Sequence record: PQ287642.1
DNA: 64,000 nucleotides
Strand: one strand, 5' to 3'
Shown: positions 3,293 through 61,974 of the stretch, piece after piece
Position numbering within the stretch: the first letter of the stretch is position 1
Layout: each line of letters starts with the position of its first letter
Notes under the pieces: model-generated
The model's database searches: none
What the model was told of the DNA's origin: nothing
Seen by the model: only the letters and a program-made list of their open reading frames with translations
Translations under genes and position numbers: made by a program

Positions 3293-3874
3293 TTACTCGG
3301 AGAATTTAACGTTAAAGGCAAAGGGCGTCCAATGGAAAGTATATTCCACATCGAAAGTGCCACGGAACCCAGCACACTCCTCGTGTAGATTAGCGATGCA
3401 ATGACTCAAAGCAATCTGTTGTAGAATACTGAATTGATTAAGAGAGAACTCAAACTCTTTTTTACTAATCGTGGAAGACGGATCAAAGTCAGGATGTCCA
3501 TCAACTGTCGATTTATGTGCCAGCGTACCACGGAAAATAGCTTTATTACCAGTGGGAAGGACATCGATAAAATATTCGGTAATTACAAATCCTTTCTCTC
3601 CAACTTCCTTAAGATCCTCTAGCAGATATTGCGTGATAAGGAATAGTTGTGGCGGGAGTTCGAGTGAAGGGTGCTTACCAGTGATGGTATCAATGAGGCT
3701 AGTGATTTGACTGAAATGAAGTGAATGAACAACACCGTCATTATCAAGAATAGAGAGTTCATGCGAAATCATCGTTTCGCTCTCACCCTCAGCTTGATGT
3801 TCAAAAATAAGACCTTTTGTGATCTTATCAAATTTATCCATGGTATCTACAAACGGGTAATTAACAGCGGTCAT
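3293..3874 (-). CDS. chmB: Phage-nucleus-associated protein ChmB (gp2-like)
   Basis: 193-aa sequence recalled as PA1C gp2; position between RNR and DHFR fits phiKZ-type synteny; recall only, not searched. Confidence 0.72.
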   Translation of the reverse strand: MTAVNYPFVDTMDKFDKITKGLIFEHQAEGESETMISHELSILDNDGVVHSLHFSQITSLIDTITGKHPSLELPPQLFLITQYLLEDLKEVGEKGFVITEYFIDVLPTGNKAIFRGTLAHKSTVDGHPDFDPSSTISKKEFEFSLNQFSILQQIALSHCIANLHEECAGFRGTFDVEYTFHWTPFAFNVKFSE

Positions 3875-4266: not shown

Positions 4267-4420
4267 CTGAGTAGTTCTTCTTTTTAGGTGTTGTATGGTA
4301 TGCTGTTAGAAGATTTTAACTTATTTAAAACTAAATGATCGTAAAAATACTTGCGTGGTTTTAGTTATGTTAGAATTCATCAACTTACGTTTTACGCAAT
4401 AAACAACTGGAAAAATAGAG

Positions 4421-7799: not shown

Positions 7800-8957
7800 A
7801 TGACTGACAAGCTCCCCAAGAAAATCTTTAACGTAGAAAAGACTGACTATGACGTACCCGAAATCATTCTTGGTCAAGAACCTGGCCTTCTAGATTCTAT
7901 CCATACCCATTTCCCTGTACCCTGGTCTCTCTATAAACGTCTGCGTAAGCTTGACTGGGATGAACTGGAATTCGATTTCCAGCAATGCCTTATTGAATTC
8001 GAAACCTGTAATAAGTCGACTTACGACATGATGATCAAAACCCTTGCATGGCAATGGGAAGCTGACTCTGTAGCTAGTCGAGCAATTGTGAATATTCTTG
8101 GTCCTGTAATGACTGACTCTAGGATTTGGACTGGTTATGTTCGAATCAATGATAACGAAGATGTTCACGCCCTTACTTATTCCGAGATTGTCCGGGGTTC
8201 GTTTAAGAATCCGCGTGTTATTCTCGATGAAATCCTGCGCGTTGAAGAAGCACAGGAACGCATGGTTGCTGTTGCACGTGTAATGGGTGAAGCACACGAT
8301 ACATCTCACGCCTATGCATTGAAGCAAGTACCCAACAACCAGGAAACTTACAATAAGATCTTCATGTTCTTCATTGCACTTTATATGCTGGAACGTATTC
8401 AGTTCATGGCATCGTTTGCAGTGACTTTTGCTATTTGTAAAACTGGCTTGTTCCAACAAATCGGTGAAGCGGTTAAGAAGATCGCTCAAGATGAATTCGA
8501 GATCCATGCCCAATACGGACAAGAAGTCATCAAGGCTCTTCTGAAAACTGAACGTGGTATGACTGCTTATGAGCAATGCAAACCACAAATCGTTGAACTG
8601 TTCTGGGAAATCATTCGGACTGAAGTTACTTGGGTTAAATACCTGTTCTCCGAAGGTCGTAGCTTGGCTGGCGTTAACGCACAAAAACTGTTCCAATGGG
8701 TTCTGTTTAATGGTAACGCTGCTGGTACTTTCCTGAATATTATTCCGGAGACTCTGGAAAAGCATTCGGCAGAATACCTGGAACTTACTGGTGTTCCTCT
8801 GGAATTCCCTGAAGATAACCCACTGCCGTTCATGGTAGAATATCTCGACATTTCGGCAACTCAAGCCTCTCCACAAGAAGCAGAGAAAGGTGACTACATG
8901 GTTAACCTTCTTGACACCCGTGGTGAAAAAGACGAATTTGATGTGGATTTCCTGTAA
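7800..8957 (+). CDS. nrdB: Ribonucleotide reductase class Ia beta subunit
   Basis: Di-iron ligands (ENEDVH-like NEDVH, DEFEIH), LERIQFMASF; start moved to ATG 7800 after AAGGA. Confidence 0.95.
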   Translation: MTDKLPKKIFNVEKTDYDVPEIILGQEPGLLDSIHTHFPVPWSLYKRLRKLDWDELEFDFQQCLIEFETCNKSTYDMMIKTLAWQWEADSVASRAIVNILGPVMTDSRIWTGYVRINDNEDVHALTYSEIVRGSFKNPRVILDEILRVEEAQERMVAVARVMGEAHDTSHAYALKQVPNNQETYNKIFMFFIALYMLERIQFMASFAVTFAICKTGLFQQIGEAVKKIAQDEFEIHAQYGQEVIKALLKTERGMTAYEQCKPQIVELFWEIIRTEVTWVKYLFSEGRSLAGVNAQKLFQWVLFNGNAAGTFLNIIPETLEKHSAEYLELTGVPLEFPEDNPLPFMVEYLDISATQASPQEAEKGDYMVNLLDTRGEKDEFDVDFL

Positions 8958-9370
8958 TGAAAAAGATCACTCTTGCTGTAACTCTAATGTTCCCTCTAAT
9001 TGCATTTGCAGCAGGGGAGATCAAATCTTCTACCACTGGTATCGTAAAGCAGTCTGAGTGTCAACTGGTTGCTAAAGATAACAGTATCGTTGGTGCAACT
9101 GTTGGCGGTACAGCAGGTGCAGTTGGCGGTGTAATGTTGGGTAGAGCTATCTTCGGTAAATCAGGCGGCTGGATTGGTGGTCTCGTTGGAGGCGCCGCTG
9201 GCGGTGCTGTCGGAAACGAGATAGGGGCTACTGAAACATTCCAGTGTAAGATGATTATCGAAGCTGATGGAAAGCAACATCTGGTGCAAACTGTTGCTAA
9301 CAAGAAACCAGAGGTAGGTAAAACGATTACAGTTCTTGAAATGGCAGATGGTACCCGAGAAGTAATGTAA
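8957..9370 (+). CDS. Glycine-zipper 2TM exported/membrane protein
   Basis: Signal peptide then GATVGGTAGAVGG...GGLVGGAAGGAVG; TAATG overlap with nrdB. Confidence 0.8.
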   Translation: MKKITLAVTLMFPLIAFAAGEIKSSTTGIVKQSECQLVAKDNSIVGATVGGTAGAVGGVMLGRAIFGKSGGWIGGLVGGAAGGAVGNEIGATETFQCKMIIEADGKQHLVQTVANKKPEVGKTITVLEMADGTREVM

Positions 9371-9427
9371 ACATATAGCTCTCCTTCGGGAGGGCTTTAT
9401 GTTATGTCAATTCTAAAGGTAACAATC

Positions 9428-10156
9428 ATGCCTAACATTAACCTTTTGCTGCGATACGCGATATCACTCGAAGCGGAAATGGATGACCTCATCAATCAGT
9501 TGTTTGATGAAGTTAACAATCCACGCGCGGATCGTCCTTACGATGTATGGGTAGAACCAGATACAGATAACGTTATCCAACCACCAACCATAACTGAACT
9601 TATTAATAATACGGACGATATGTGGACTTACTACAATCGCTCCGGAAGATCTAATGTAAAGAGTTACAAATATGGTCCTGATTGGATGCTTGTAGAATTC
9701 GGTGGAGAGGTGTTTTATCTTTATACACTAAAAAGTATCACTGAAATACAACTACAGGACATGAAATACTTCGCTGATGGCGGTGCTGGTTTGAACAGTT
9801 ATATCAGCAAGGTTATCCGTGGTGGTTATGTAGCTAAAAATATTAATAATGAGATTATCCTAACTCCAGGTTTTGAAATGTATAAATCTGAAGGACCTAT
9901 AATTTTCATTCATGTAAGAAACAAAAAAGAGGAAAAGAACATGTCTTCTCTTACTACCCTCACTGGATATAAAGCTGCTATTGAAGCAGCAGGTATTGAT
10001 GGACTTAGCCCAGACGCTCGCAAAGTGATGCAGATTGGACTAGCGCAAATTGATAAAGAACATAATTTCACAAGTGTTTCTACTGAGAACTTCGATGAAG
10101 TAATAACTCTGGAAAATATCGAAGAGCGTATTGCTTTCGTTAGCGAAGAAGAATAA
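9428..10156 (+). CDS. KTSC-like domain protein, possible head protein
   Basis: SNVKSYKYG...VEF...YLY...GLNSYISK core; S-x-E motifs (ISLE, VSTE); start 9428 preferred from SD. Confidence 0.55.
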   Translation: MPNINLLLRYAISLEAEMDDLINQLFDEVNNPRADRPYDVWVEPDTDNVIQPPTITELINNTDDMWTYYNRSGRSNVKSYKYGPDWMLVEFGGEVFYLYTLKSITEIQLQDMKYFADGGAGLNSYISKVIRGGYVAKNINNEIILTPGFEMYKSEGPIIFIHVRNKKEEKNMSSLTTLTGYKAAIEAAGIDGLSPDARKVMQIGLAQIDKEHNFTSVSTENFDEVITLENIEERIAFVSEEE

Positions 10157-10158
10157 CT

Positions 10159-10179
10159 TACCAGCTATGTAATGATATG
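10159..10179 (+). promoter_or_regulatory. TAC-N14-TATG promoter-like motif of ncRNA candidate 1
   Basis: TAC 10159-61 and TATG 10176-79; same spacing as the motifs before the tRNAs. Confidence 0.6.
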
Positions 10180-10355
10180 TAGAGATGTCACTCCTCATCT
10201 TTACTAGGATCACAGCGCGCCGGAGCCAGCAACCCTTCCAGCTGGCTTCTAGGAAGTAAGACTCCCTGTTGTGATCCCCTCCTTTCAGTTGGTAAGTTGT
10301 ATCTTTCTCCTTGTTGTGTTGATGAGCATATCGCCTCCCACTGGGAGGCTTTATG
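10179..10355 (+). ncRNA. Candidate structured sRNA 1 with anti-SD motifs
   Basis: Helices 10207-16/10268-77, 10222-30/10241-49, 10194-99/10321-26; G-U pairs favour + strand; bounded by promoter motif and terminator. Confidence 0.65.
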
Positions 10356-10395
10356 TTGAATAATACTGAGGAGCCTCTATTTATAGAGAAGAAAT

Positions 10396-10481
10396 GCCCG
10401 GTTGGTGAAATTGGTAGTACACAAGAGACTTAAAATCTCTCGGCGAAAGCCGTGTCGGTTCGAGTCCGACACCGGGTACCA
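10396..10481 (+). tRNA. trnL: tRNA-Leu(UAA)
   Basis: Cloverleaf, AGAGA-CTTAAAA-TCTCT, long variable arm, encoded CCA. Confidence 0.95.
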
Positions 10482-10487
10482 AATTTA

Positions 10488-10563
10488 CGGAGTGTAGCGC
10501 AGTTGGTAGCGCGCCTGCTTTGGGAGCAGGATGTCGGGAGTTCGAGTCTCTCCACTCCGACCA
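10488..10563 (+). tRNA. trnP: tRNA-Pro(UGG)
   Basis: CCTGC-TTTGGGA-GCAGG, TTCGA loop, CCA. Confidence 0.96.
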
Positions 10564-10621
10564 TTTAAATATAGAGCCCCTCTGTCATAGAGGGGTTTTA
10601 TATTGTATCGAGATAATAGAC

Positions 10622-10843
10622 ATGAATATCGCGACAATGTTTGTTTTAGCGATTCACGTGGGGTTGTTTGGAATTACATCCACAGAAGAATCGACTATCC
10701 AGTTTGAAAATAAAGCACAGTGTATTTCGCGTCTAGATATTTTAGAAAACAAGTACCGTGGATACGAGATACTACGAACGGAGAATACGTTGAAAGTTAC
10801 TAATCCTGACGAGTATTCTATTTTTATTTTCAAATGTCTTTAA
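10622..10843 (+). CDS. Small exported hypothetical protein
   Basis: Hydrophobic N-terminus; start moved to 10622 to avoid overlap with tRNA-Pro. Confidence 0.6.
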   Translation: MNIATMFVLAIHVGLFGITSTEESTIQFENKAQCISRLDILENKYRGYEILRTENTLKVTNPDEYSIFIFKCL

Positions 10844-11139
10844 GAGAAATTATGGAACATCAAGAACAAAAAGCGCTACTAAAAGAACCATTGCAGAAAC
10901 TCTACAATCTTACGTTTAGTCCCCGCTTACGTAATGGAGCGAAAGCTCCCGATTGGATCCGCCTAACTGATGAAGTAACCCTATTCCCAAACGGATTAGA
11001 TATTACAATCAACGCTATTACACGTTGTATCAAATGGGAACTTATCGAAGAGAGTATAAGTAACATTACTTATGTTGAAGCCATGTTCTTCAATAAAGGT
11101 CTTAAAGCAGTTGAAACCTATCTCAAACATACGGAGTAA
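10834..11139 (+). CDS. Hypothetical protein
   Basis: Coupled ORF in a compact operon. Confidence 0.65.
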   Translation: MSLREIMEHQEQKALLKEPLQKLYNLTFSPRLRNGAKAPDWIRLTDEVTLFPNGLDITINAITRCIKWELIEESISNITYVEAMFFNKGLKAVETYLKHTE

Positions 11140-11141
11140 AT

Positions 11142-11489
11142 ATGAATCATCTAACCCCAACGCAGAACGCTGTATATTTCACATTTGTTAGTCCTGAGTT
11201 TATGAAACTAACTCTTGTTGAATCTTTTGTAGCTATCCACAAGAAACATCCAGAAGTAAAGCACTGTGTTAAGAAAAAGATTAGTGATAATGAAACTCAG
11301 TTTATCTTTATCTTCAAAGATGGGACTGATAATTTAATCGTCACGCGTAAGACTGAACCTTGTCCTGAACTGGATAGTCAAGTAGGCGATAGAATTAAGT
11401 TGTCTGGTGAAGAACTTAAAAATATTCTCACTAAACATGGTCGCCCTAGTGACAGTAACTATTTTAAGCATTGGACAGACCGTTCATGA
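11142..11489 (+). CDS. Hypothetical protein
   Basis: GGAG SD, operon-like packing. Confidence 0.7.
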   Translation: MNHLTPTQNAVYFTFVSPEFMKLTLVESFVAIHKKHPEVKHCVKKKISDNETQFIFIFKDGTDNLIVTRKTEPCPELDSQVGDRIKLSGEELKNILTKHGRPSDSNYFKHWTDRS

Positions 11490-11532
11490 TATTATAAATC
11501 CCTATGTATACTAATATGTAGGTAATGAATTA

Positions 11533-11609
11533 GGGTCTATAGCTCAGTTGGTTAGAGCAGGCGACTCATAATCGCTTGGTCGTAGGTTCGAGTCCTACTG
11601 GACCCACCA
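11533..11609 (+). tRNA. tRNA with CAU anticodon, probably Ile2 (lysidine type)
   Basis: GGCGA-CTCATAA-TCGCT-type arm; GGGTCTA acceptor resembles bacterial Ile2 rather than initiator Met. Confidence 0.88.
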
Positions 11610-11732
11610 AATTAATAAAGCATAATGCCTCCCTTAAATAGGGGAGGCATTATTCTGTCTATGATAATAAAATAAATATCTGAACCGCAAAGGTTATCCT
11701 ATGATCTAAATGGTTTACTTGAGAGCATACTA

Positions 11733-13580
11733 ATGTTTGAATTATTGTTATCAGCTGCTGGGCAAGCTAAGCCAGTGGAAATGATACCGTATAACCAACC
11801 AACATTGTTTGGACAACTGGATGTTGGATTGGTTGGATCGGTACCCTATTTCAGAAATGGTTTATTAAATATTAATAGTGGTGCTCCATCAAGAAGTACA
11901 ACTGATAATAAAATCAGAATTTTTGATAGCACTGGTACTCAAATCAGTAAAACAGCTGTCCAAAATAGTTATTCACTTTGTCATACTGCGGGTGTATTTG
12001 TTCCAACATCTGATAGACTTTACATGTTCGGTGGGCGTCGTGGGGCTTCTTGGACACAAAACGTCATCACGATGATCAATCCAACTGTACCTAATGATAA
12101 TCTTATTAGTAATCAGTTGATGAATACATCCACTTATAACAGTATCGGCGATTGGGATGGCGGTGAATTTATTTGGGTACTGGAACATGCAACAGATCTT
12201 TTGATTCGCTATAGACTATCGAATAACGTTCGAGAAGTAATGAGTGCCCGGTGCCCTGTTATTCTATCTGGAGCGTATGCATTCTGCCATAAAGGGAATT
12301 TCTATGTGATGGGTGGATGGAAGAACATCTCTGGCAGTTGGGTTGTTAACCAAGATGTTTATAAATACACCGTTGCTATTAATACATGGACATTGTACCA
12401 TTCATACTCCACAGACTACCACGGTGGTCATCAAGGTGGTAAGTACTGGAACGGGACTTTTAACTACACTATCGTTAAAGATGGTAAGATTCATTGTGTT
12501 CGTTATTATATCGCCGAAAAACAATTTGTTGTTACTGAGACGAATATTGGTGAGGTCCATGGGACATCAGTCGCATTAAATCCATCGAATGGCGATCTGT
12601 ATCTGATCGGTGGTTCGGACATTGTTATCGATGACGCCCTTTTTAACACCCCTGAAAGAACGAAAGCAGCTATCTATAAATTCACTATTCCTATCCCTCC
12701 AAGTAAAACTGAATGGGAAGTAATGGCAAACGCACCTTATGATAGTCGAGGTTCCACTGCGGTTGTAATAGATGATGAACTGTATATGTTCGGCGGGTAT
12801 ACAAGTACAGGTGCATATAGAGGCGCGTTTAATAAATATAATCCTGAGACTAATACATGGAACGGTCTATTCACTGGATCTGGTTTAAGTCCGAGTGCAC
12901 GTGCTAATATGTGTGCAGCTGCAAATGATACACATATGTACCTATTCAGTGGATCTAACCAATCAGCAGATTTCTGGCGTTATAACGTAGCGACCAATGA
13001 TTGGACGGCTATTACACCCGCTTCTCCGGGTTCATCTAATCCAGTATTTAGAACACAAGCTACGATGGTTCATTATAATGGTAAGCTCTATTTGCTTGGC
13101 GGGAATAATGAATCTGACGCGTTGTTCGTCTACGATATTGCATCTAACATGTGGTCAAAACGAGTTGCGCAAGGTGGTATCCAACGATCTTCGCATAGAG
13201 CGGTTGTTGTCGGCGAGTACATGTATGTCTATGGTGGATTTGTAAATGGTTCGCAATCCGGTCGATTTGATCGAATGAATATGAATACATTTGCATGGGA
13301 GTCTCTACCGACTACCGATGGGCCAGGTGTTAACAGTTACGGTGTAATGCTGACTAACGATGAAGAAATTATATACATTGGCGGTGTTGACGAAGACAAA
13401 CGTAGAAAAGCCAATGCGTATAATATCCAATCGAGAACATGGCGTAAACTACCAGAACTACCAAACGGTGTGAATGATGGCTATGGTGGATTTATTAATG
13501 GCACAGCATATGTTGGCGGTGGTCTAACTGGAGCCAGTAATAATACAATTACAGACAAGTTCTATCGTCTTGGAATTTAA
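11733..13580 (+). CDS. Double Kelch beta-propeller protein, MFELLL N-terminus
   Basis: About 11-12 LYxFGG...Y..W repeats in 615 aa. Confidence 0.88.
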   Translation: MFELLLSAAGQAKPVEMIPYNQPTLFGQLDVGLVGSVPYFRNGLLNINSGAPSRSTTDNKIRIFDSTGTQISKTAVQNSYSLCHTAGVFVPTSDRLYMFGGRRGASWTQNVITMINPTVPNDNLISNQLMNTSTYNSIGDWDGGEFIWVLEHATDLLIRYRLSNNVREVMSARCPVILSGAYAFCHKGNFYVMGGWKNISGSWVVNQDVYKYTVAINTWTLYHSYSTDYHGGHQGGKYWNGTFNYTIVKDGKIHCVRYYIAEKQFVVTETNIGEVHGTSVALNPSNGDLYLIGGSDIVIDDALFNTPERTKAAIYKFTIPIPPSKTEWEVMANAPYDSRGSTAVVIDDELYMFGGYTSTGAYRGAFNKYNPETNTWNGLFTGSGLSPSARANMCAAANDTHMYLFSGSNQSADFWRYNVATNDWTAITPASPGSSNPVFRTQATMVHYNGKLYLLGGNNESDALFVYDIASNMWSKRVAQGGIQRSSHRAVVVGEYMYVYGGFVNGSQSGRFDRMNMNTFAWESLPTTDGPGVNSYGVMLTNDEEIIYIGGVDEDKRRKANAYNIQSRTWRKLPELPNGVNDGYGGFINGTAYVGGGLTGASNNTITDKFYRLGI

Positions 13581-13584
13581 TAAA

Positions 13585-13605
13585 TACTGGTATGGTAATA
13601 CTATG
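13585..13605 (+). promoter_or_regulatory. TAC-N14-TATG motif before tRNA-Tyr
   Basis: AAATACTGG-11 nt-TATGTAAG. Confidence 0.65.
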
Positions 13606-13624
13606 TAAGACTATACCAGATTTC

Positions 13625-13713
13625 GGAGAGATAGGAAAATTGGTAACCCCAGCTGACTGTAAATCAGCCGTCCGTATCGGGCATTACTGGTTCGAGTCCA
13701 GTCCTCTCCACCA
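13625..13713 (+). tRNA. trnY: tRNA-Tyr(GUA)
   Basis: GCTGA-CTGTAAA-TCAGC, long variable arm, CCA. Confidence 0.93.
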
Positions 13714-13775
13714 ATGCGTCATAGTGCTCTCCCTTCGGGGAGAGCTTTATGTCAACTATTACAAAAGGAAATAAC

Positions 13776-14312
13776 ATGTCAGCATTAAGTTTGATTAAAC
13801 GTTGGTCACCCGCAGTACCTAAAATTCTATTGAGTCCACAGGACACTGTCAATGAGACTAAGATGGTCTTAGATAACGAGGGTGGAGAATATATGAAGTT
13901 TAATGACTTCTTGATCCTCCTTCAAAACGGCGTGTACCTAGAAGCCACCAAAGAGATGCATGAGACTTTGTTAGATGGTAAAGCACAGCAAAGTCTCATT
14001 GCTCGACTTAGTCGCATGGGTTATGAAGACTTTGATCAAGTAATGAAAGTCTTAGAAGAACAGCGTGATTCTGTACTTAAGAAGAAAGAATATGAAATTT
14101 GGCAAGAAGGACATCGCGCTACTGGCGAATCTAGTATAGCCAGCTTTGTAGGTAAAGCTGAAGGTTATTCTTTCTTAGATGCTGTAGACAACTACATGAA
14201 GACAGCTAGTGAGGAAGTTAAGAAATGTTTCCGTGCTGAACTAGACGCAGCTTATATTTGGGGTTGTCGTTTGTTTGACAATGAAGCCGACGCACGTAAA
14301 TCTTTCGGGTGA
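13776..14312 (+). CDS. Hypothetical protein
   Basis: AAGGA SD before ATG 13776. Confidence 0.75.
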   Translation: MSALSLIKRWSPAVPKILLSPQDTVNETKMVLDNEGGEYMKFNDFLILLQNGVYLEATKEMHETLLDGKAQQSLIARLSRMGYEDFDQVMKVLEEQRDSVLKKKEYEIWQEGHRATGESSIASFVGKAEGYSFLDAVDNYMKTASEEVKKCFRAELDAAYIWGCRLFDNEADARKSFG

Positions 14313-14315
14313 CTT

Positions 14316-14486
14316 ATGGTTCCTAATCTTTCTATAAAAGCAATTCATGCTCGTCAAACTCCAGAACAACTTGCTGACAACCGAGAGAAAACTCTTGAGG
14401 CCCTGGCTAAGTTCAACCAGGCTCAACGTAAACTTGAAGAGCATTGCAAACGCAATGGACTTGAAGTACCAATTATGGTTTGTTAA
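14316..14486 (+). CDS. 56-aa microprotein (not in ORF track)
   Basis: MVPNLSIKAIHARQTPEQLADNREK...; packed between neighbouring genes. Confidence 0.65.
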   Translation: MVPNLSIKAIHARQTPEQLADNREKTLEALAKFNQAQRKLEEHCKRNGLEVPIMVC

Positions 14487-14488
14487 TA

Positions 14489-14635
14489 ATGACTGATGAC
14501 AAAAAAGAAAAACAGCATAAAGGGCGACAAGCCCTCAATGTAGTTGGTGAAATCATTGGCGCTGTGTTCGAAGCTATTTGGTGGGTCTTGACCTGCCCGT
14601 TCCGTTTAATCGGTGTACTCTGTACGCTTGATTAA
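14489..14635 (+). CDS. 48-aa membrane microprotein (not in ORF track)
   Basis: Basic N-terminus then hydrophobic IIGAVFEAIWWVLTCPFRLIGVLC. Confidence 0.65.
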   Translation: MTDDKKEKQHKGRQALNVVGEIIGAVFEAIWWVLTCPFRLIGVLCTLD

Positions 14636-14640
14636 AATAA

Positions 14641-14661
14641 TACCTAGTTGATTACAATATG
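14641..14661 (+). promoter_or_regulatory. TAC-N14-TATG promoter-like motif of ncRNA candidate 2
   Basis: TAC 14641-43 and TATG 14658-61. Confidence 0.6.
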
Positions 14662-14932
14662 TAACGAACAAAGTTACTTCATCGAAAGCTACCTGTAGAA
14701 ACATCTCACATTAGGTCCAGCAGACTGTAGTATTTCGATGTGACCATTTATAGCACCCGGAAACCAAAGGCTAATAGTGGCAAGCCGATGATTGAGGGAA
14801 GTCGAATGGGCCGCCCATACCGAAAGGTGTCTCTTCAGTTCCACTAACTGTCACCTCACGATGGACATTACGATCAAAAAGAGACTGGTTTTAATGTCCG
14901 ATATACGACTCTCCGATAAGGAGAGTTTTATG
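14661..14932 (+). ncRNA. Candidate structured ncRNA 2 (about 270 nt)
   Basis: Multiple hairpins including a GAAA tetraloop; promoter motif upstream; terminator about 14907-14932. Confidence 0.6.
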
Positions 14933-14985
14933 TCGTTTTATACTGGGCTATATAACAGTATGTCAAAGGATGTAAAGAGGTAATC

Positions 14986-15276
14986 ATGACAGCTTTCATG
15001 CCATGTCATACTGAGGCTGATATAGACCTAGCTTCAAGAAATAAAATGTTGTCAGAGCTACTTATAGAAGAATTCCCAAATACAGAAGGGATGTCAACTA
15101 AAGCAGCAGAAGACTATCTACGGTCTAAGGTCATAGATAAATTCAATATTAACCATCCCGAATATCAAGCACATGTAAGTTACGATTGTACTACACGTGG
15201 AGATTTCATTACGGCTTGGGTAACTCGAAGACTTGCCCTTGTAAAACTTGCTATAACTACAGAGGATCAATCATGA
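14986..15276 (+). CDS. Hypothetical protein
   Basis: GAGG SD; operon packing. Confidence 0.7.
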   Translation: MTAFMPCHTEADIDLASRNKMLSELLIEEFPNTEGMSTKAAEDYLRSKVIDKFNINHPEYQAHVSYDCTTRGDFITAWVTRRLALVKLAITTEDQS

Positions 15277-15488
15277 ACGAAAACGCACTGTACCAAGACG
15301 ATGGACTTGGCGCACTCATTACGGAAATTTTTAGTCGGGATCTGAATAAGAAATTTCAAGAATGGTATCGTCCGATTATGGATGACCCCAGCATTGAAAA
15401 GGTACCCGTTTGTAGAAACGGTCAGGTTGTAAAAGAACCCGTTAATTTTGTAGCCCTTTTGAAAGAATGGTTAGCTAATCAAGATTAA
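15273..15488 (+). CDS. Hypothetical protein (MNENALY...)
   Basis: ATGA overlap with the upstream stop and GAGG SD; shorter than the ORF-track call. Confidence 0.6.
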   Translation: MNENALYQDDGLGALITEIFSRDLNKKFQEWYRPIMDDPSIEKVPVCRNGQVVKEPVNFVALLKEWLANQD

Positions 15489-15548
15489 AAACATAAAGCC
15501 TCCCTTCGGGGAGGTTATATGTTATGATTTTGACGAAAGGTAATCGTT

Positions 15549-16487
15549 ATGTTTGAAGTTTTGTTAGGAATTGGGGAATATAAAAGTAAGCAAGGTTGGG
15601 TTCAGCTACAGGGACCCGATGTCGGAAGAAATCAGTCAACATCTGTTGTTGTAGGAGACAAACTTTATATCTTCGGTGGACGCCGTGCCACCACTAATGC
15701 GTTTAACACGGTATCCGTCTATGACTTCATAGCAGACGAATGGAAAGAACTACCAGCTGGAGCGAACGTTAACCTACGTGCTGCTGGTGGTTTAGTTGGT
15801 AATAAATTTTACGTATTCGGTGGATATACAGGTTCCGCTGATACGAATACAATGGTAGAGTTTACTATTGATGGCGAAACTATCACCCCTGTAACTCGAT
15901 CCAATGGTGGATTGGCTGTTCGTAATAGCCACTGCATGTCGGCTATTGATAATAAAGTGTATCTGTTTGGTGGGAACGGTGCACAGGGTATTATGTATGA
16001 ATTTAAAAGCTACAATACCGATAACTTTACAGTAGCTAATCTAACACCACCATACCAAATCCGTTATGCGTCTCTAACTAGTCATGATCGCCGTCTTTAC
16101 ACGCTCGGTGGATATGAAACCGCTAACACATCAGTTGCCTCATTTAGAAGTTATAATGTTGACAACAACACATGGACTGCCCACAAGAATGGTCTTGTAA
16201 ATAGAAATAGACATTCTGCCGTAGCTCTTAATAATAAGATCTATGTATTCGGTGGTCAATCTGGTACGAGCTCTACTCCAAACACTATTAACAACGATCA
16301 TATTTTCAGTGTCTATGATATTGAAACCGATACATGGTCAAACATAATACTTCCTCCGGGTAAGATGCCCCCTACTAGATTCTATGCTAATATGGAAGTC
16401 TACGACGGTAAGATTTATTTATCTGGTGGTTACACGAATGGTGTGTACCACAATGATCTATGGGTATACGATCCAGAGAATCCATGA
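15549..16487 (+). CDS. Kelch beta-propeller protein, MFEVLL N-terminus
   Basis: Six LY[IV]FGG...YD..W repeats. Confidence 0.9.
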   Translation: MFEVLLGIGEYKSKQGWVQLQGPDVGRNQSTSVVVGDKLYIFGGRRATTNAFNTVSVYDFIADEWKELPAGANVNLRAAGGLVGNKFYVFGGYTGSADTNTMVEFTIDGETITPVTRSNGGLAVRNSHCMSAIDNKVYLFGGNGAQGIMYEFKSYNTDNFTVANLTPPYQIRYASLTSHDRRLYTLGGYETANTSVASFRSYNVDNNTWTAHKNGLVNRNRHSAVALNNKIYVFGGQSGTSSTPNTINNDHIFSVYDIETDTWSNIILPPGKMPPTRFYANMEVYDGKIYLSGGYTNGVYHNDLWVYDPENP

Positions 16488-16494
16488 AAACAAA

Positions 16495-16515
16495 TACTGG
16501 CGTAGTGATTATATG
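16495..16515 (+). promoter_or_regulatory. TAC-N14-TATG motif before tRNA-Leu(UAG)
   Basis: AAATACTGG-11 nt-TATGTAAG, same ends as 13585. Confidence 0.65.
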
Positions 16516-16544
16516 TAAGGATTAGCGTTAAGCATATTCTACAT

Positions 16545-16630
16545 GGGAACATAGGCGAATTGGTATAGCCAGCTGGTTTAGGTCCAGCCGTCGTAAGACA
16601 CTGTGGGTTCGAGTCCCTCTGTTCCTACCA
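16545..16630 (+). tRNA. trnL: tRNA-Leu(UAG)
   Basis: GCTGG-TTTAGGT-CCAGC, variable arm, CCA. Confidence 0.92.
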
Positions 16631-16795
16631 TTTCAATAGAGCCTGCCGAAAGGCGGGCTTTATGTTGCAAATTGTATGATTTAGTCTTTTGGTAAGTACC
16701 TTTAATGGGGGAGGCCTTAGACGGTAAGGGAGTAGGAACGTGAAGTTCTATACAGTCACCCCTCTGTAAACAGTCACTTTTCAATGGATAAAATT

Positions 16796-18364
16796 ATGTT
16801 TGAATCGTTGTTGTCAGTACTCATTAAGGTAACAGAAAATAAATTACCCGGTCCCTCTACCTTTGAATACGGTGATTCGACACTTGGTCTGTATGGTGAG
16901 TTAGCAAGTGATAAGTTTATAACTTACCCTCAGTTAAGAACACTTGTTGAACTCGATTCCATTGGTAGCATAAATACCGATGCCGGCTGGATTAAGGTAT
17001 CTAGGAATAATGTTGTCATGTATTATTCAAAGACAGCTATTCTCCGATCCATTAGTCCAAACCAACTTGATACCGCTGGTTTAATAGATGGTAGTAAAGT
17101 TATTGTAATTGACGGAAATATGTTTAAAGTCCGTCTTATGAATGCAGGTGAAAATCCTTATTCTGATATTACTACCCAAGGTAATGAAGGTTCCGAGTTA
17201 TGGGATATTTTTGGTAACGTTACAACCAAAGGAAGCTGGGCGAAATATACAGATTCTCAACTTATAGGTGCTGAAGGCGGTAGTTATAGCTGGGCGGCTA
17301 ATAGAAATACAAATGGTAATTATCTACAGTTCTCGCCTTCGTCTACTCATCCCCAGGCAAAGAATGGAGTTTATGTTTACGACGGACACCCACCGACGGA
17401 AGCTACTAATTATAGAGGATGGCGTCCAGTACTAGAATATATTCCACCGAAGGAACTTAAAGGTTTATCGTCTGTACTATCGACAGTAAATCCACCACCA
17501 CAACGTGGGATGCCAGTGCTTGCATATGACTCGGATAACAATGATATCTATATGGCTTGTGGATATACAACTGGACCAACTGCTTTCATGTCCGACCTAC
17601 ATCGATTAGACATGGATACAAAAACATGGACTAAGTTACCATCGGTTGTGCCATTCCAAGGTGAAACCACTACCACGAATATGGTTTACAGTAACGGTAA
17701 ATTAATTCTTCATGGTAACCCATTGTCAACTGGGCCAACTATTTATATTTACACCATAGCTACTGATACCTGGGAAACTAAAAAGCTCGCGGCTATTCCA
17801 GGTTTGGTTGAAGCTTACTACATCGAACGTACAGCCAGTATAGTTAAAGATGACATACTCTATATTGTCGGTGGTTTCTCTGGTCGAAACGATAAGATCC
17901 ATAAGAGTATTATAACGGTTGATCTAACCTCCTACTCAATCGATCTTATTGAAAATATTCTACCATTTGAGGCTTGGCATCACGATCTTGGATTTAATGA
18001 TAATAACGAATTAGTTATTGTTGCATCTCAAGGTAGATTATCTATTGGTGGAACAAATATCACACCAACGGACTATATAAAAATTAGTCCCGATTTTAGT
18101 GCCGCTGAGACCATCCCTTTAAATGCACCGGCTAATAAGTATTCGACGTATAGGTCTATTGTTTTCGGCAACAATATCTATATTACGAATAATACTACAA
18201 CACAGTTAGCATTGGTACAACTTAATAAAGAACCAGAGCTAATCGGAGATCCTTTCCCTACAATTAGGTCGTATGAAGAAATGGTGATTACATCAGCTGG
18301 TGTATATAGATTCAGCGGTGATGTTTCTAAAACAGCACCTGTAGTCGAATACGAAATTAAATAA
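16796..18364 (+). CDS. Virion structural protein: phiKZ-type N-domain (...GWRPVLE) plus Kelch-like propeller, MFESLL start
   Basis: GDSTLGLYGE and GWRPVLE motifs of phiKZ-like structural paralogs; C-terminal propeller repeats. Confidence 0.75.
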   Translation: MFESLLSVLIKVTENKLPGPSTFEYGDSTLGLYGELASDKFITYPQLRTLVELDSIGSINTDAGWIKVSRNNVVMYYSKTAILRSISPNQLDTAGLIDGSKVIVIDGNMFKVRLMNAGENPYSDITTQGNEGSELWDIFGNVTTKGSWAKYTDSQLIGAEGGSYSWAANRNTNGNYLQFSPSSTHPQAKNGVYVYDGHPPTEATNYRGWRPVLEYIPPKELKGLSSVLSTVNPPPQRGMPVLAYDSDNNDIYMACGYTTGPTAFMSDLHRLDMDTKTWTKLPSVVPFQGETTTTNMVYSNGKLILHGNPLSTGPTIYIYTIATDTWETKKLAAIPGLVEAYYIERTASIVKDDILYIVGGFSGRNDKIHKSIITVDLTSYSIDLIENILPFEAWHHDLGFNDNNELVIVASQGRLSIGGTNITPTDYIKISPDFSAAETIPLNAPANKYSTYRSIVFGNNIYITNNTTTQLALVQLNKEPELIGDPFPTIRSYEEMVITSAGVYRFSGDVSKTAPVVEYEIK

Positions 18365-18385
18365 TACTTCGTGTCTAATAGTATA
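18365..18385 (+). promoter_or_regulatory. TAC-N14-TATA motif before tRNA-Thr/Asp
   Basis: TAATACTTC-11 nt-TATACGAG. Confidence 0.6.
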
Positions 18386-18403
18386 CGAGAGTATTCAATT
18401 TTC

Positions 18404-18481
<78 letters not shown>

Positions 18482-18501
18482 GTTTAAGTAGTTTAAAATT
18501 A

Positions 18502-18578
18502 GGCTCCATAGTTCAGTTGGTTAGAATGCTTGCCTGTCACGCAAGAGGTCGCCGGTTCAAGTCCGGCTGGAGTCGCCA
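18502..18578 (+). tRNA. trnD: tRNA-Asp(GUC)
   Basis: CTTGC-CTGTCAC-GCAAG, CCA. Confidence 0.95.
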
Positions 18579-18672
18579 AACATAACAAGGAATCTTCGGA
18601 TTCCTTTTATGCCGTAACATGAATATACTGAAAGACCAGATCCTATGGTTAAACATTATCTAGGGTAAAGAC

Positions 18673-18858
18673 GTGTCACTAAAAGCTTTGCAGGGTATAG
18701 CTAGTAGTGTTCCTACAAATGAACAAAAGGAACGATTGGCTAAAGTTCGAGAAACAATGGAAGAGCTAAACGAATCTATTAAAAGACAAATTCGGAATAG
18801 AAAGCCAAGCGCTACTCTTCTCAACAAAACAGTAAACTGGGGAAACAAATATGACTAA
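18673..18858 (+). CDS. Small coiled-coil hypothetical protein
   Basis: GTG start, overlaps the next gene. Confidence 0.6.
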   Translation: MSLKALQGIASSVPTNEQKERLAKVRETMEELNESIKRQIRNRKPSATLLNKTVNWGNKYD

Positions 18859-19150
18859 GACTCTGGTTCGTGCTAAACTGATTACGGAAGCAGGTGCTTG
18901 GATGTCTTCTGATTGGGGGAGTGGATTTATCGCTAGTCGGTTTGTTAAGACGAGTGGAGATACCATTACTCCTAACGAATTCGAGTCTCTGATCACAGAC
19001 TTCGCTATTGGAGATATGCTCGTTGTATGGCCGAATGGACTGAGGACTTCCTATAAGACCGAAAGCTTTGATAAGAACTTTACACACGTGAAAGATGAGT
19101 ACTATCAAACTGATCTTATTCCTTTGTTCTATCCCGGAAGTAAACAGTAA
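18851..19150 (+). CDS. Hypothetical protein
   Basis: Coupled ORF. Confidence 0.7.
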   Translation: MTKTLVRAKLITEAGAWMSSDWGSGFIASRFVKTSGDTITPNEFESLITDFAIGDMLVVWPNGLRTSYKTESFDKNFTHVKDEYYQTDLIPLFYPGSKQ

Positions 19151-19410
19151 TGGCTTTCGCTTGTTGTAATGCCGTCTATATGAACTACATCAATCATGAT
19201 AGTAGTTTTAACATCGATGTATTAAGAAAGATATTTGGTGTTGTAGACGATATCATTCAGAAAGAACGTACAGACGAGTTAGCTGTATGGCATGCTAAGA
19301 AACATGATGCACCTGTAGCTAAGGCTACGTTTGTAATCATAGGTGGAGTTGAACAAGAACTCTGTACCTGTGATTGCCATAAGCATGACGGTTTGAACGT
19401 TTTACATTGA
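19150..19410 (+). CDS. Putative Zn-binding small protein
   Basis: N-terminal CC and C-terminal CTCDCH...H. Confidence 0.65.
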   Translation: MAFACCNAVYMNYINHDSSFNIDVLRKIFGVVDDIIQKERTDELAVWHAKKHDAPVAKATFVIIGGVEQELCTCDCHKHDGLNVLH

Positions 19411-19417
19411 GGTGGTT

Positions 19418-19594
19418 ATGAGTACATTGGTACATAAATACGTTGCGTTCACACGAACTTTTAAACTCACTGAAATCAAAATGGATAAGGGTGATCGTAT
19501 GGTTCGTGTTGGTGGTGGTTTCAATAAAGGTAAAGGGTTTTTTAGAGTAGACTTAGGTGCACTTGGCTACCGTATAACTCGCCGAAATAGATAA
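19418..19594 (+). CDS. Small basic hypothetical protein
   Basis: GAGGTGG SD; Gly/Arg-rich; end approximate. Confidence 0.55.
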   Translation: MSTLVHKYVAFTRTFKLTEIKMDKGDRMVRVGGGFNKGKGFFRVDLGALGYRITRRNR

Positions 19595-19613
19595 CATAAA
19601 AGCCTTCCCCACT

Positions 19614-19775
19614 GATGAAGGCTTTGTTTCGTCATTAGAGATCGTTAGAACTCCCACTGCACTGAACAACCCCGATTACGCTCGTCTTGCTCGTGGTGTT
19701 ATGACAAAGACAGTTGCTACCGATACAACAAATAGAGTGTTGTGGCCACTGTTTAAATATAGAGGGCGAGTTTAA
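19614..19775 (+). pseudogene. Possible 5'-truncated ORF remnant coupled to the next gene
   Basis: Stop-free protein-like frame ending TAA(19773-75), overlapping ATG 19775; no upstream start. Confidence 0.35.
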
Positions 19776-20659
19776 TGAAGATTACGTTTTATGGGACTGG
19801 AGTTGCTTGTAAGGAATATCGTGTTTATGCATCAGCCGAAATCACTGATCTTAATACACTAACGCCAATTGCAACCATTCCAGCTACTCCGCCTTACCGT
19901 AACTATCATGAAGTTGATTTCAATGCCATAAAGAACGTTCAGTACTATGTTGTTATTAGGCAGGTATTAGAAGAAGGTTTATTCTTAGATACCGGTCATA
20001 CTACCTGTATAGAACGTAATACTGGTGCCTTGTCTAATAATGCCGACATGGGTGTAGACAGGCTACAAAGGGGTGATTCTACATTGGGCTATTTCGGTAC
20101 AGTCCCTATGGAAGACTTACCTGGACTAACAGAACTCGTAGCAGCATATAGCTCTCTCAGGAGTGCTGACCTCAAGGGTACTACTGAACCTCCTTATGGA
20201 AAGTTTATGGTTAACAATGAGGTATATTTCATTCCATCCAGCGTACATAACTGGTTGTATCCAAATGAAGTATATGCAGCTGGGTTTGCAGCTGTCGAGG
20301 GAACACTTGACGGTACTTATATAACTCCGCAGATAAAAAGTGACAGTCGATTTAAAGGTCTAGTTGAACAAGGACGCGATATTATCTATCAAGGACATAC
20401 CTACCGACCATTCATTATGGATCAGTGGATGTTTGATAATCTGTTCACTCCGATGAACAATAATAAACAGTTACGGACAGCATCTAACTTACAAGTTAAA
20501 TATGATACAATAAGTAAGAAGGATGCTTATACAGCAGTTGCGCTTTCTAATAACAAGGCATCTAAATACGTTAGGCAAAATACAGTCGGGGCAACTATTC
20601 TTTGGTACGACCACTGGCTATTGTCTAATATTGATATCTGCTGGAAGCTGATGGAATAA
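19775..20659 (+). CDS. phiKZ-type virion structural paralog
   Basis: GDSTLGYFG motif shared with the 16796 protein. Confidence 0.65.
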   Translation: MKITFYGTGVACKEYRVYASAEITDLNTLTPIATIPATPPYRNYHEVDFNAIKNVQYYVVIRQVLEEGLFLDTGHTTCIERNTGALSNNADMGVDRLQRGDSTLGYFGTVPMEDLPGLTELVAAYSSLRSADLKGTTEPPYGKFMVNNEVYFIPSSVHNWLYPNEVYAAGFAAVEGTLDGTYITPQIKSDSRFKGLVEQGRDIIYQGHTYRPFIMDQWMFDNLFTPMNNNKQLRTASNLQVKYDTISKKDAYTAVALSNNKASKYVRQNTVGATILWYDHWLLSNIDICWKLME

Positions 20660-61766: not shown

Positions 61767-61767
61767 T

Positions 61768-61974
61768 TTATTTACCTTTATCAGTGATGGTTGTGCGAAC
61801 GTCATTACGGAACCGCCGCACTATTTCGAGTATTTCTTTTTGATCTACATAACGAATGTCTGTCAGTTCAATTTCACGACAAGCCAATGAAATTTCAGCT
61901 TCAATCTGATCTGACAACGTTCGACGTAAACCATCTATCGTTACTTTACCCGGTGGCGGCGGCGCTGCAATCAT
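61768..61974 (-). CDS. Hypothetical protein
   Basis: Coupled ORF. Confidence 0.6.
   Translation of the reverse strand: MIAAPPPPGKVTIDGLRRTLSDQIEAEISLACREIELTDIRYVDQKEILEIVRRFRNDVRTTITDKGK

What the first reader, a model, noticed from the sequence alone, without database searches (positions are those of the whole stretch)
10179..10355. sRNA candidate that mimics the 16S rRNA anti-Shine-Dalgarno tail
Seen in sequence: GATCCCCTCCTT (10273-84) matches the conserved 16S 3' end GAUCACCUCCUU at 11 of 12 nt. In the predicted fold its CCUCCUU is single-stranded directly after the 10-bp helix 10207-16/10268-77. Further CUCCU motifs lie at 10191-95 and 10307-11. G-U pairs in two helices favour the + strand. 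Loop CUUCC could alternatively pair with the downstream GGAAG, and GGAG with CUCC, suggesting a second conformation. Inference: it could mask SD sequences to reprogram translation, act as a decoy for nucleases or proteins that target the 16S tail, or titrate an RNA-binding protein.
Basis: partly seen in the sequence, partly recalled or inferred. Interest (0 to 1): 0.82.

Follow-up and report, generated by a model that had tools for sequence, protein, structure and literature searches.

The report
Jumbo-phage small RNA, phiKZ orthologue
The region encodes a real, structured small RNA of a Pseudomonas jumbo phage, the counterpart of a 141-nt RNA already seen on northern blots in phage phiKZ. Its resemblance to the ribosomal anti-Shine-Dalgarno tail lies in an insertion found only in this phage genus, so it is not the conserved feature of the RNA family.

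Summary
The window is Pseudomonas phage HHBS36_1 (Pawinskivirus, a phiKZ relative). Positions 10179-10355 (+) lie between the gp303-like virion gene and tRNA-Leu/tRNA-Pro.

**What is confirmed**
- The fold is supported by covariation in eight sequences from three genera.
- The unit starts at the G of a conserved TATG (the phiKZ late-promoter consensus, G = +1). It ends at a hairpin homologous to phiKZ terminator T131.
- In phiKZ the orthologous unit (P144 to T131, TU237) is a published, northern-validated, abundant 141-nt RNA. It also reads through into PHIKZ302 and the tRNA cluster.

So "sRNA on the + strand" is supported, but it is not new.

**What is not supported**
- The 16S-tail match sits in a linker that is absent from phiKZ, and only its 3' part is present in PhiPA3.
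- On its own, an 11-of-12 match somewhere in 64 kb is not rare.

**What is conserved**
- Two fully exposed pyrimidine-rich apical loops occur in all genera; one of them is an invariant CCCUUCCA.
- Within Pawinskivirus, 53 of 55 linker positions are identical, all but two at its 3' end.

Function is unknown. The best guess, about 0.35, is a trans-acting RNA that pairs through its C/U-rich single strands with purine-rich sites such as ribosome-binding sites.

The parts
9404..10156 (+). Upstream gene: gp303-like virion structural protein. In phiKZ the gp304-gp303 mRNA (TU238) ends at the same terminator as the small RNA.
   Evidence: Annotation of PQ287642.1. tblastn to PHIKZ303, PhiPA3 gp375 and 201phi2-1 gp455. 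TU238 in the supplement of 10.1101/2023.10.13.562163.
10166..10179 (+). Promoter-like element: two TATG motifs (10166-10169 and 10176-10179). The predicted +1 is G10179.
   Evidence: The motif TATGTAATGNTATGTAGA is invariant in Pawinskivirus, PhiPA3, KTN4 and PA7; phiKZ proper keeps only the second TATG. TATG with G as +1 is the phiKZ late-promoter consensus (PMC4666361). phiKZ P144 is classed as a late promoter. Promoter activity was not measured in this phage.
10179..10204 (+). Hairpin 1: stem 10179-10187/10196-10204, loop 10188-10195 (UCACUCCU). The loop is C/U-rich in every orthologue.
   Evidence: Folds. Helix 1 has 2 pairs with changes on both sides. Loop motifs have P(unpaired) 0.92-1.00.
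10207..10277 (+). Three-way core. The closing helix 10207-10216/10268-10277 encloses hairpin 2 (stem 10222-10230/10241-10249, invariant loop 10231-10240 holding CCCUUCCA) and hairpin 3 (10251-10267).
   Evidence: Covariation in helices 2-4 and RNAalifold. A covariance model of HP2+HP3 scores 81.5 bits here and 74-75 bits in phiKZ, PA7 and PhiPA3, and finds nothing else.
10278..10332 (+). Single-stranded linker of 55 nt. It is specific to this lineage.
   Evidence: Absent in the phiKZ group. PhiPA3 shares only the 20-mer at 10305-10324. The linker is 53/55 identical in HPP-Temi and PS119XW, against 74.5% and 86.6% for the neighbouring CDS. P(unpaired) is 0.65-0.75.
10333..10355 (+). Intrinsic terminator: hairpin 10333-10339/10343-10349 plus the tail UUUAUG. 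It is the orthologue of phiKZ T131. The predicted 3' end is about 10353-10355.
   Evidence: Terminator scan. Alignment to the T131 sequence given in the supplement. In phiKZ, the distance from the TATG G to 6 nt past the hairpin is 141 nt, the published length.
10352..10355 (+). A further TATG fused to the terminator tail. It is a candidate second late promoter for the tRNA-Leu/tRNA-Pro transcript.
   Evidence: Sequence. phiKZ has a mapped late TSS (P143) 30 nt after T131. Eight hairpin+TTTATG modules occur in the window. Inference only.
10396..10563 (+). tRNA-Leu(UAA) 10396-10481 and tRNA-Pro(UGG) 10488-10563, reached by read-through or by the second promoter.
   Evidence: ARAGORN and Rfam. 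In phiKZ the longest reads from P144 run through PHIKZ302 and the tRNAs.

Best explanation
**Identity (near certain, about 0.9).** Positions 10179-10355 (+) are the Pawinskivirus orthologue of the phiKZ small RNA made from late promoter P144 and terminator T131 (TU237, 141 nt).
- It is transcribed by the phage's non-virion RNA polymerase from a TATG promoter 20 nt after the gp303-like stop codon.
- It folds into a 5' hairpin, a three-way core and a terminator hairpin.
- It is about 177 nt here because of a 55-nt single-stranded linker.
- By analogy with phiKZ, the same sequence is also the 3' end of the gp304/gp303 mRNA and, on read-through, the 5' leader of the tRNA transcript.

**Mechanism (inferred, about 0.35).** The released RNA acts in trans by base pairing through its permanently exposed pyrimidine-rich single strands.
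- In all genera these are the hairpin-1 loop and the invariant hairpin-2 loop CCCUUCCA.
- In Pawinskivirus they also include the two CUCCU-containing stretches of the linker.
- The proposed partners are purine-rich stretches such as ribosome-binding sites of phage or host mRNAs, which would change their translation or stability late in infection.

The likeness to the 16S tail would then be a by-product of carrying an SD-complementary seed, not decoy mimicry of the ribosome.
For: **Identity**
- Synteny RNR-beta / gp304 / gp303 / element / tRNA-Leu / tRNA-Pro is shared with phiKZ.
- The core is homologous.
- Three genera fold independently into the same architecture.
- Covariation supports the fold.
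- The published phiKZ unit TU237 (141 nt, late promoter, intrinsic terminator, northern-confirmed and abundant, with read-through forms) maps within 1-2 nt of my alignment-based prediction.

**Independent unit rather than a leader tied to one gene**
- The downstream gene differs between genera: PHIKZ302 in phiKZ, a 222-nt ORF in PhiPA3, tRNA-Leu here.
- phiKZ has a separate promoter just after the terminator.

**Exposed seeds**
- Stems vary by compensatory changes while the HP2 loop is invariant.
- The loops have P(unpaired) = 1.00 in all eight sequences.
- The unstructured linker is 53/55 conserved, against 56% for the next spacer and 74.5% for the CDS.
- A 20-mer of the linker is identical in PhiPA3.
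- CTCCT is locally enriched.
- The HP1 loop pairs slightly better with translation-initiation regions than with gene interiors or than shuffled versions do.
Against: - No target was found. There is no antisense match of 12 nt or more to the unpaired parts in the first 100 kb of the genome.
- The best 9-bp hit, to the initiation region of CDS0045, is not conserved in HPP-Temi.
- The HP2 loop and the CCUCCUU segment pair no better with initiation regions than with gene interiors.
- phiKZ itself has no CUCCU at all; its loops read CCUUCC. If function is conserved, the partner is GGAAGG-like rather than a canonical SD.
- Invariant loops fit a protein-binding site equally well.
- Expression of this particular orthologue has not been measured.
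- The host genome could not be searched.
Confidence: 0.45

Rival explanations
1. It is a cis-acting leader or conditional terminator. The structure exists mainly to set how much late transcription from the TATG promoter, and from the gp304/gp303 mRNA, reads through into the tRNA genes. The short RNA is a by-product.
For: - In phiKZ both the short RNA and full-length read-through transcripts start at P144, and the authors describe the short form as the result of premature termination.
- In this window the tRNAs follow directly.
Against: - A second promoter sits right after the terminator: P143 in phiKZ and TATG 10352-10355 here.
- The downstream gene is not conserved between genera, while the RNA is.
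- No conserved alternative (anti-terminator) pairing was found. The repeated GUUGUG segment that could compete for the closing helix is absent from phiKZ.
- Invariant loops are not needed for a plain terminator.
Confidence: 0.2
2. It is a protein-binding RNA, acting as a sponge, scaffold or cofactor. The invariant HP2 loop and the nearly invariant HP3 would be recognised by a phage or host RNA-binding protein, and base pairing would play no part.
For: - 33 of 53 core columns are invariant across three genera, while the stems covary.
- No RNA target was found.
- phiKZ infection is known to involve phage factors that bind the host translation machinery (PMC10914614, seen in the listing only).
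Against: - There is no match to a known protein-binding RNA family (Rfam).
- There are no GGA motifs in loops (the RsmA type) and no A-rich Crc/Hfq motif.
- The U-tail is short (UUU), which is poor for the Hfq proximal face. This last point rests on my knowledge of Hfq, not on a test here.
Confidence: 0.2
3. It is a strict 16S 3'-tail mimic. The GAUCCCCUCCUU segment would act as a decoy for factors or nucleases that recognise the 16S tail, or as a bulk competitor for SD sequences.
For: - The match is 11 of 12 and is placed single-stranded after a helix.
- The segment is perfectly conserved within Pawinskivirus.
- Genes in the rightward block around it carry an SD core less often than those in the leftward block: 8/19 against 42/58, p = 0.026.
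Against: - The segment is absent from phiKZ, KTN4, PA7 and PhiPA3.
- One such 12-mer match per 64 kb is not unusual.
- GAUCC, the part that extends the match beyond the CCUCCUU core, is paired in the closing helix. It changes to GGUCC or GGUUCC in PS119XW and HPP-Temi through compensatory substitutions, so it is under structural selection, not selection for mimicry.
Confidence: 0.05
4. It has no separate function. It would be only the structured 3' end of the gp303 mRNA, stabilising it against 3' exonucleases, plus a terminator.
For: - It lies immediately after the gp303 homologue in all three genera.
- phiKZ TU238 ends at T131.
Against: - It has its own conserved TATG promoter, and in phiKZ a capped (primary) 5' end.
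- The loops and the linker are conserved far beyond what a stabiliser needs.
Confidence: 0.1
5. It is a small protein gene: the annotated 30-aa ORF CDS0012 (10271-10363), a hydrophobic peptide.
For: - It is annotated in HHBS36_1, and a 35-aa version is annotated in HPP-Temi.
- The ORF is open in all Pawinskivirus copies.
Against: - The GTG start lies inside the closing helix and has no SD upstream.
- The stop codon (10361-10363) lies beyond the terminator, so the short RNA lacks it.
- GTG is lost in HPP-Temi, and the changes there are the compensatory partners of changes in the 5' strand of the helix.
- The ORF is not annotated in PA1C, BRkr, phiHQ or PS119XW.
- The region is absent from phiKZ and PhiPA3.
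Confidence: 0.03

Closest known systems
phiKZ small RNA upstream of PHIKZ302 (TU237: promoter P144 to terminator T131, 141 nt; Putzeys et al. 2024, PMC10914365 and bioRxiv 10.1101/2023.10.13.562163)
   Same: - Same position after the gp303 homologue and same strand.
- Same TATG start and a homologous terminator.
- Homologous, covarying three-way core with the invariant CCCUUCCA loop.
- C/U-rich 5' hairpin loop.
- Read-through towards tRNA-Leu and tRNA-Pro.
   Different: - It is 177 nt rather than 141 nt, because a 55-nt conserved single-stranded linker carrying CCUCCUU and CUCCU is inserted between the core and the terminator.
- PHIKZ302 is missing, so the tRNAs follow directly.
- The 3' strand of the closing helix is placed differently.
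- Expression here is inferred, not measured.
- The function of the phiKZ RNA is itself unknown.
Other UTR-derived small RNAs of Pseudomonas jumbo phages (phiKZ 3'UTR_PHIKZ298 and 5'UTR_p40, Gerovac et al. 2021 PMC8545117; 201phi2-1 sRNAs including one just upstream of a tRNA, PMC11512511)
   Same: - Short promoter-to-terminator units in intergenic space of nucleus-forming phages.
- Abundant and of unknown function.
- 201phi2-1 and Viktualia carry a roughly 75-nt TATG-to-hairpin unit at the same position after their gp303 homologue.
   Different: - They are at different loci and show no sequence or structure homology to this core.
C-rich-loop regulatory RNAs of Gram-positive bacteria (RsaE/RoxS, RNAIII type; UCCC motifs pairing with SD regions). 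This comparison rests on my own knowledge and was not tested here.
   Same: - Several exposed C/U-rich loops or single strands on one small RNA, complementary to purine-rich ribosome-binding sites.
   Different: - There is no homology.
- This RNA is from a phage of a Gram-negative host.
- The invariant loop reads CCCUUCC (complement GGAAGGG), which is not a canonical SD complement.
- No target is known.
Stable RNAs C and D (species 1 and 2) encoded in the tRNA gene cluster of phage T4. This comparison rests on my own knowledge and was not tested here.
   Same: - Small stable non-tRNA RNAs co-located and co-transcribed with phage tRNA genes, whose function has long been unknown.
   Different: - There is no homology.
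- The T4 RNAs are released by processing of a tRNA precursor, whereas this RNA has its own promoter and terminator.

Membership tests
phiKZ P144-T131 small RNA (TU237) | Located directly downstream of the gp303 homologue, on the same strand, in the block RNR-beta / gp304 / gp303 / RNA / tRNA-Leu / tRNA-Pro | tested here: met
   Annotations of HHBS36_1, PS119XW, PhiPA3, KTN4 and phiKZ; tRNAs.
phiKZ P144-T131 small RNA (TU237) | Starts at a late-type TATG promoter (G = +1) | tested here: met
   The TATG at 10176-10179 aligns with the TATG of phiKZ P144. The consensus is from PMC4666361. Only the motif was tested; promoter activity in this phage was not.
phiKZ P144-T131 small RNA (TU237) | Ends at an intrinsic terminator homologous to T131 | tested here: met
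   Hairpin 10333-10349 plus TTTATG aligns with the T131 sequence.
phiKZ P144-T131 small RNA (TU237) | Homologous core sequence and structure | tested here: met
   blastn; covariance model at 81.5 bits here against 74-75 bits for phiKZ, PA7 and PhiPA3; covariation.
phiKZ P144-T131 small RNA (TU237) | Accumulates as a discrete abundant small RNA during infection | not testable with these tools
   Shown for phiKZ by ONT-cappable-seq and northern blot. There are no expression data for HHBS36_1 or its genus.
16S rRNA 3'-tail / anti-SD mimic | Single-stranded CCUCC core with flanks matching the 16S tail | tested here: met
   11 of 12 at 10273-10284; P(unpaired) is 0.75 for CCUCCUU. However, GAUCC is paired in the closing helix.
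16S rRNA 3'-tail / anti-SD mimic | The match exceeds chance | tested here: not met
   0.33 matches expected per window, and a second unrelated match is present. Only the local clustering of CTCCT is unusual.
16S rRNA 3'-tail / anti-SD mimic | The motif is conserved in orthologues | tested here: not met
   It is conserved within Pawinskivirus but the segment is absent from phiKZ, KTN4, PA7 and PhiPA3.
16S rRNA 3'-tail / anti-SD mimic | Binds SD sequences or factors that recognise the 16S tail | not testable with these tools
   In silico, the CCUCCUU segment pairs no better with 84 initiation regions than with gene interiors.
Any Rfam family | Score at or above the gathering threshold | tested here: not met
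   Only tRNAs pass. At E up to 10 nothing is found on the + strand of 10179-10355.
Transcription attenuator or riboswitch leader | Conserved mutually exclusive terminator and anti-terminator pairings | tested here: inconclusive
   No alternative pairing is shared by the three genera. Ligand or factor dependence cannot be tested.
Small protein gene (annotated CDS0012) | Conserved start codon with a ribosome-binding site, and an ORF contained in the transcript | tested here: not met
   The GTG is lost in HPP-Temi, there is no SD, and the stop lies beyond the terminator.

The most novel reading that the evidence does not exclude
In Pawinskivirus the ancestral phiKZ-type small RNA has gained a 55-nt, almost perfectly conserved single-stranded arm carrying CCUCCUU and CUCCU. 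Late in infection this abundant RNA would mask Shine-Dalgarno sites of SD-dependent (leftward-block or host) mRNAs. That would shift ribosomes towards late messages that have little or no SD, such as the gp303-like gene with its 3-nt leader. This would be an RNA-based, phage-encoded reprogramming of translation initiation.
Probability: 0.1. Interest if true: 0.8.

Novelty: new member of a known kind. Interest (0 to 1): 0.35.

Why it matters
Small RNAs of nucleus-forming jumbo phages have been catalogued, but none has a known function. This analysis adds four things:
- The phiKZ P144-T131 RNA is a family conserved in three genera (Phikzvirus, Miltoncavirus, Pawinskivirus).
- It defines a covariation-supported structure for the family.
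- It identifies the parts under the strongest constraint: the invariant CCCUUCCA loop, the C/U-rich 5' loop, and a genus-specific conserved single strand.
- It corrects a probably spurious ORF annotation.

This gives precise mutagenesis targets for a tractable model (phiKZ or PA1C on PAO1). It does not by itself reveal a new mechanism.

Tried and rejected
1. **Rfam.** Searches at gathering and permissive thresholds returned only tRNAs. The weak Trp_leader and rnk hits at 10498-10607 are tRNA-Pro plus its terminator.
2. **More homologues.**
   - IMG/VR returned only PhiPA3 and PA7.
   - The metagenome scan gave 8 hits, all in unrelated, mostly high-GC, apparently coding DNA, so I treated them as chance matches.
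   - A protein-anchored search of IMG/VR for gp303 relatives found nothing.
3. **More distant phages.** 201phi2-1, Viktualia and Phabio have no core homology.
4. **Paralogues in the window.** None were found.
5. **Targets.**
   - Duplex scan against 84 initiation regions.
   - The best hit, CDS0045, was rejected because the complementarity is lost in HPP-Temi.
   - An exact antisense search of the first 100 kb of the genome found only repeats of the terminator module.
   - The remaining 200 kb of the phage and the host genome were not searched.
CUUCC with GGAAG is not conserved.
7. **The small ORF CDS0012.** Judged unlikely.
8. **CRISPR-repeat mimicry (RNA anti-CRISPR).** Considered from memory of the P. 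aeruginosa repeats. I saw no resemblance and ran no formal test.
9. **Supplement of the 201phi2-1 paper.** Not held, so its sRNA coordinates could not be compared.

Full report
**Where we are.** The window is identical, coordinate for coordinate, to Pseudomonas phage HHBS36_1 (PQ287642.1). This is a 302-kb jumbo phage of the PA1C/PS119XW group (genus Pawinskivirus), related to phiKZ. The finding lies in the 239-nt gap between the gp303-like virion structural gene (9404-10156, +) and tRNA-Leu(UAA) 10396-10481, which is followed by tRNA-Pro(UGG). The gene order RNR-beta, gp304, gp303, gap, tRNA-Leu, tRNA-Pro is the same as in phiKZ, except that phiKZ has PHIKZ302 between the gap and the tRNAs.

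**The observation.**
- The 12-mer is at 10273-10284 and differs from GATCACCTCCTT at one position.
- CTCCT occurs at 10191, 10279 and 10307.
- The + strand RNA 10179-10355 folds to -62.2 kcal/mol (z = -3.65; none of 200 shuffles does as well). The - strand gives -56.9 kcal/mol (z = -2.59).
- The fold has a 5' hairpin, then a 10-bp helix (10207-10216/10268-10277) enclosing two hairpins, then about 55 unpaired nucleotides beginning with CCUCCUU, then a terminator hairpin (10333-10349) with the tail UUUAUG.
- The 12-mer alone is not remarkable. With one mismatch allowed, 0.33 matches are expected in the window and two are found.
- The clustering of three CTCCT in 177 nt is unusual: 34 copies on the + strand of 64 kb give about 0.09 expected.

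**It is a conserved structured RNA.**
- The 251 nt around the element are 100% identical in PA1C, BRkr and phiHQ, whose flanks are 95-97% identical. They are 92-93% identical in PS119XW and phiLBG22, and 91% in HPP-Temi.
- The first roughly 115 nt also match the phiKZ group and PhiPA3, which belong to other genera.
- Eight distinct sequences from three genera fold independently into the same architecture.
- On their alignment, 93% of cells are paired, 9 pairs change on both sides, 0 of 500 shuffles reach this, and partners slid by 1-3 columns give only 41-52% paired. RNAalifold recovers the hairpins unaided.
- Several conserved G-U pairs would be C-A on the other strand.
- No Rfam family matches.
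- A covariance model of the core finds only the orthologues. It finds no paralogue in the window and nothing in 201phi2-1, Viktualia or Phabio.
- Pattern scans of IMG/VR and of the metagenome collection added no new members.

**It is already known in phiKZ.**
- Immediately after the gp303 stop codon, all members carry TATG, usually twice, followed by GTAGA.
- TATG with its G as +1 is the late-promoter consensus of the phiKZ non-virion RNA polymerase (PMC4666361).
- In phiKZ, the distance from that G to 6 nt past the terminator hairpin is exactly 141 nt, at record positions 274149-274009.
- Putzeys et al. report TU237 for phiKZ: TSS 274148 (P144, late promoter), TTS 274007 (T131, intrinsic), 141 nt, minus strand, containing no annotated feature. 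They describe it as an abundant small intergenic transcript upstream of PHIKZ302, confirmed by northern blot, with full-length read-through forms as well (PMC10914365; supplement of 10.1101/2023.10.13.562163).
- The same tables show that the gp304-gp303 mRNA (TU238) ends at T131. They also show that reads from P144 can continue through PHIKZ302 and the tRNAs, and that another late TSS (P143) lies 30 nt after T131.
So the element is the Pawinskivirus orthologue of a published phage small RNA whose function is unknown. I found no later functional study.

**What is and is not conserved.**
- Conserved in all genera:
  - the 5' hairpin with a C/U-rich loop (UCACUCCU here, CCUACUCCU-like in PhiPA3, CCUUCCCCC or CCCUCCCCC in the phiKZ group);
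  - hairpin 2, whose stem covaries and whose loop CCCUUCCA is invariant;
  - hairpin 3;
  - the terminator.
- These loop motifs have P(unpaired) of about 1.00 in every sequence.
- The linker is not conserved across genera. It is 55 nt here, is shorter in PhiPA3 (which shares only the 20-mer at 10305-10324, including CUCCU), and is about 2 nt in phiKZ.
- Its 5' half (GAUCC) is the 3' strand of the closing helix. It changes to GGUCC or GGUUCC in PS119XW and HPP-Temi as the compensatory partner of changes in the 5' strand. Its resemblance to GAUCA therefore reflects the helix, not mimicry.
- Within the genus, however, the linker is strikingly constrained. Between HHBS36_1 and HPP-Temi it is 53/55 identical (the first 52 nt are identical), against 74.5% for the gp303-like gene, 56% for the spacer before the tRNA and 98.8% for tRNA-Leu.

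**Mechanism.**
- What is shown:
  - this is a promoter-to-terminator unit on the + strand;
  - its structure is under selection;
  - it carries exposed pyrimidine-rich elements under sequence selection;
  - in phiKZ it gives an abundant discrete RNA.
- What is inferred: the released RNA acts in trans through those single strands on purine-rich partners.
- For the inference:
  - the unit is independent of the downstream gene, which differs between genera;
  - a second promoter follows the terminator (TATG 10352-10355 here);
  - the HP1 loop pairs slightly better with initiation regions than controls do.
- Against the inference:
  - no convincing target was found;
  - the one good hit is not conserved;
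  - the invariant loop is complementary to GGAAGGG, not to a canonical SD;
  - phiKZ lacks CUCCU altogether.
- A protein-binding role or a cis role in read-through control remain serious rivals. A strict 16S-tail decoy is unlikely.
- The annotated 30-aa ORF over the RNA (10271-10363) is probably an annotation artefact.

**Context for the boldest reading.** Genes of the rightward block around the RNA carry an SD core less often (8/19) than those of the leftward block (42/58; p = 0.026). The gp303-like gene has only a 3-nt leader after its TATG. This fits an SD-masking RNA that spares late messages, but the evidence is weak and depends on annotated start codons.

**Verdict.** This is a real small RNA, correctly delimited and on the correct strand. 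It is a new member of a known but functionally uncharacterised family of jumbo-phage small RNAs. The anti-SD-tail mimicry is a genus-specific feature with no statistical weight of its own. The conserved exposed C/U-rich elements are the features worth testing.

Noticed in passing
window 10396-18578 (seven tRNAs); 10271-10363: The GenBank record of HHBS36_1 annotates none of the seven tRNA genes that ARAGORN and Rfam find in the window. It instead places a 30-aa hypothetical CDS on top of the small RNA.
   Followed up: partly
window 2195, 6710, 10323, 54968, 57376, 60375 (+); 62460, 2228 (-): There are eight perfect-stem hairpins fused to TTTATG, that is, intrinsic terminators directly joined to the late-promoter TATG. 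A similar hairpin (9377-9396, one G-U pair) fused to TATG 9398-9401 sits in front of the gp303-like gene, which would give an mRNA with a 3-nt leader.
   Followed up: partly
window 7800-20659 versus 20714-49685: An SD core (GGAG, GAGG or AGGA upstream of the start) is present at 8 of 19 genes in the rightward block and 42 of 58 in the leftward block (Fisher p = 0.026). CCTCCT/AGGAGG is also depleted in the window, with 9 copies against 20.6 expected.
   Followed up: partly
L008 about 4268-4347 (201phi2-1); L006 about 3433-3515 (Viktualia): A different unit of about 75 nt, running from TATG to a hairpin plus TTTTATG, sits right after the gp303 homologue in these more distant phages. It is a positional analogue without detectable homology to the core described here.
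   Followed up: partly
window 60411-61805 and 62459-64300; PQ287642.1 65177-67975 and 85230-85967: The phage has a set of RNA-repair, tRNA and NAD-related genes as annotated: RNA ligase, nicotinamide phosphoribosyl transferase, ribose-phosphate pyrophosphokinase, an RtcB-like tRNA splicing ligase, a nucleotidyltransferase and a QueC-like protein. These may be relevant to the phage's investment in its own tRNAs.
   Followed up: no
window 10498-10607: The weak Rfam hits to Trp_leader (26.6 bits, below threshold) and the rnk leader are explained by tRNA-Pro plus the terminator hairpin at 10579-10595.
   Followed up: yes
window 10262-10324: Degenerate direct repeats of CUCCYU...GUUGUG occur at 10262, 10278 and 10307. 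They suggest that the genus-specific linker arose by duplication of the 3' strand of the closing helix. The third copy could form a weaker 6-bp alternative with 10211-10216.
   Followed up: partly
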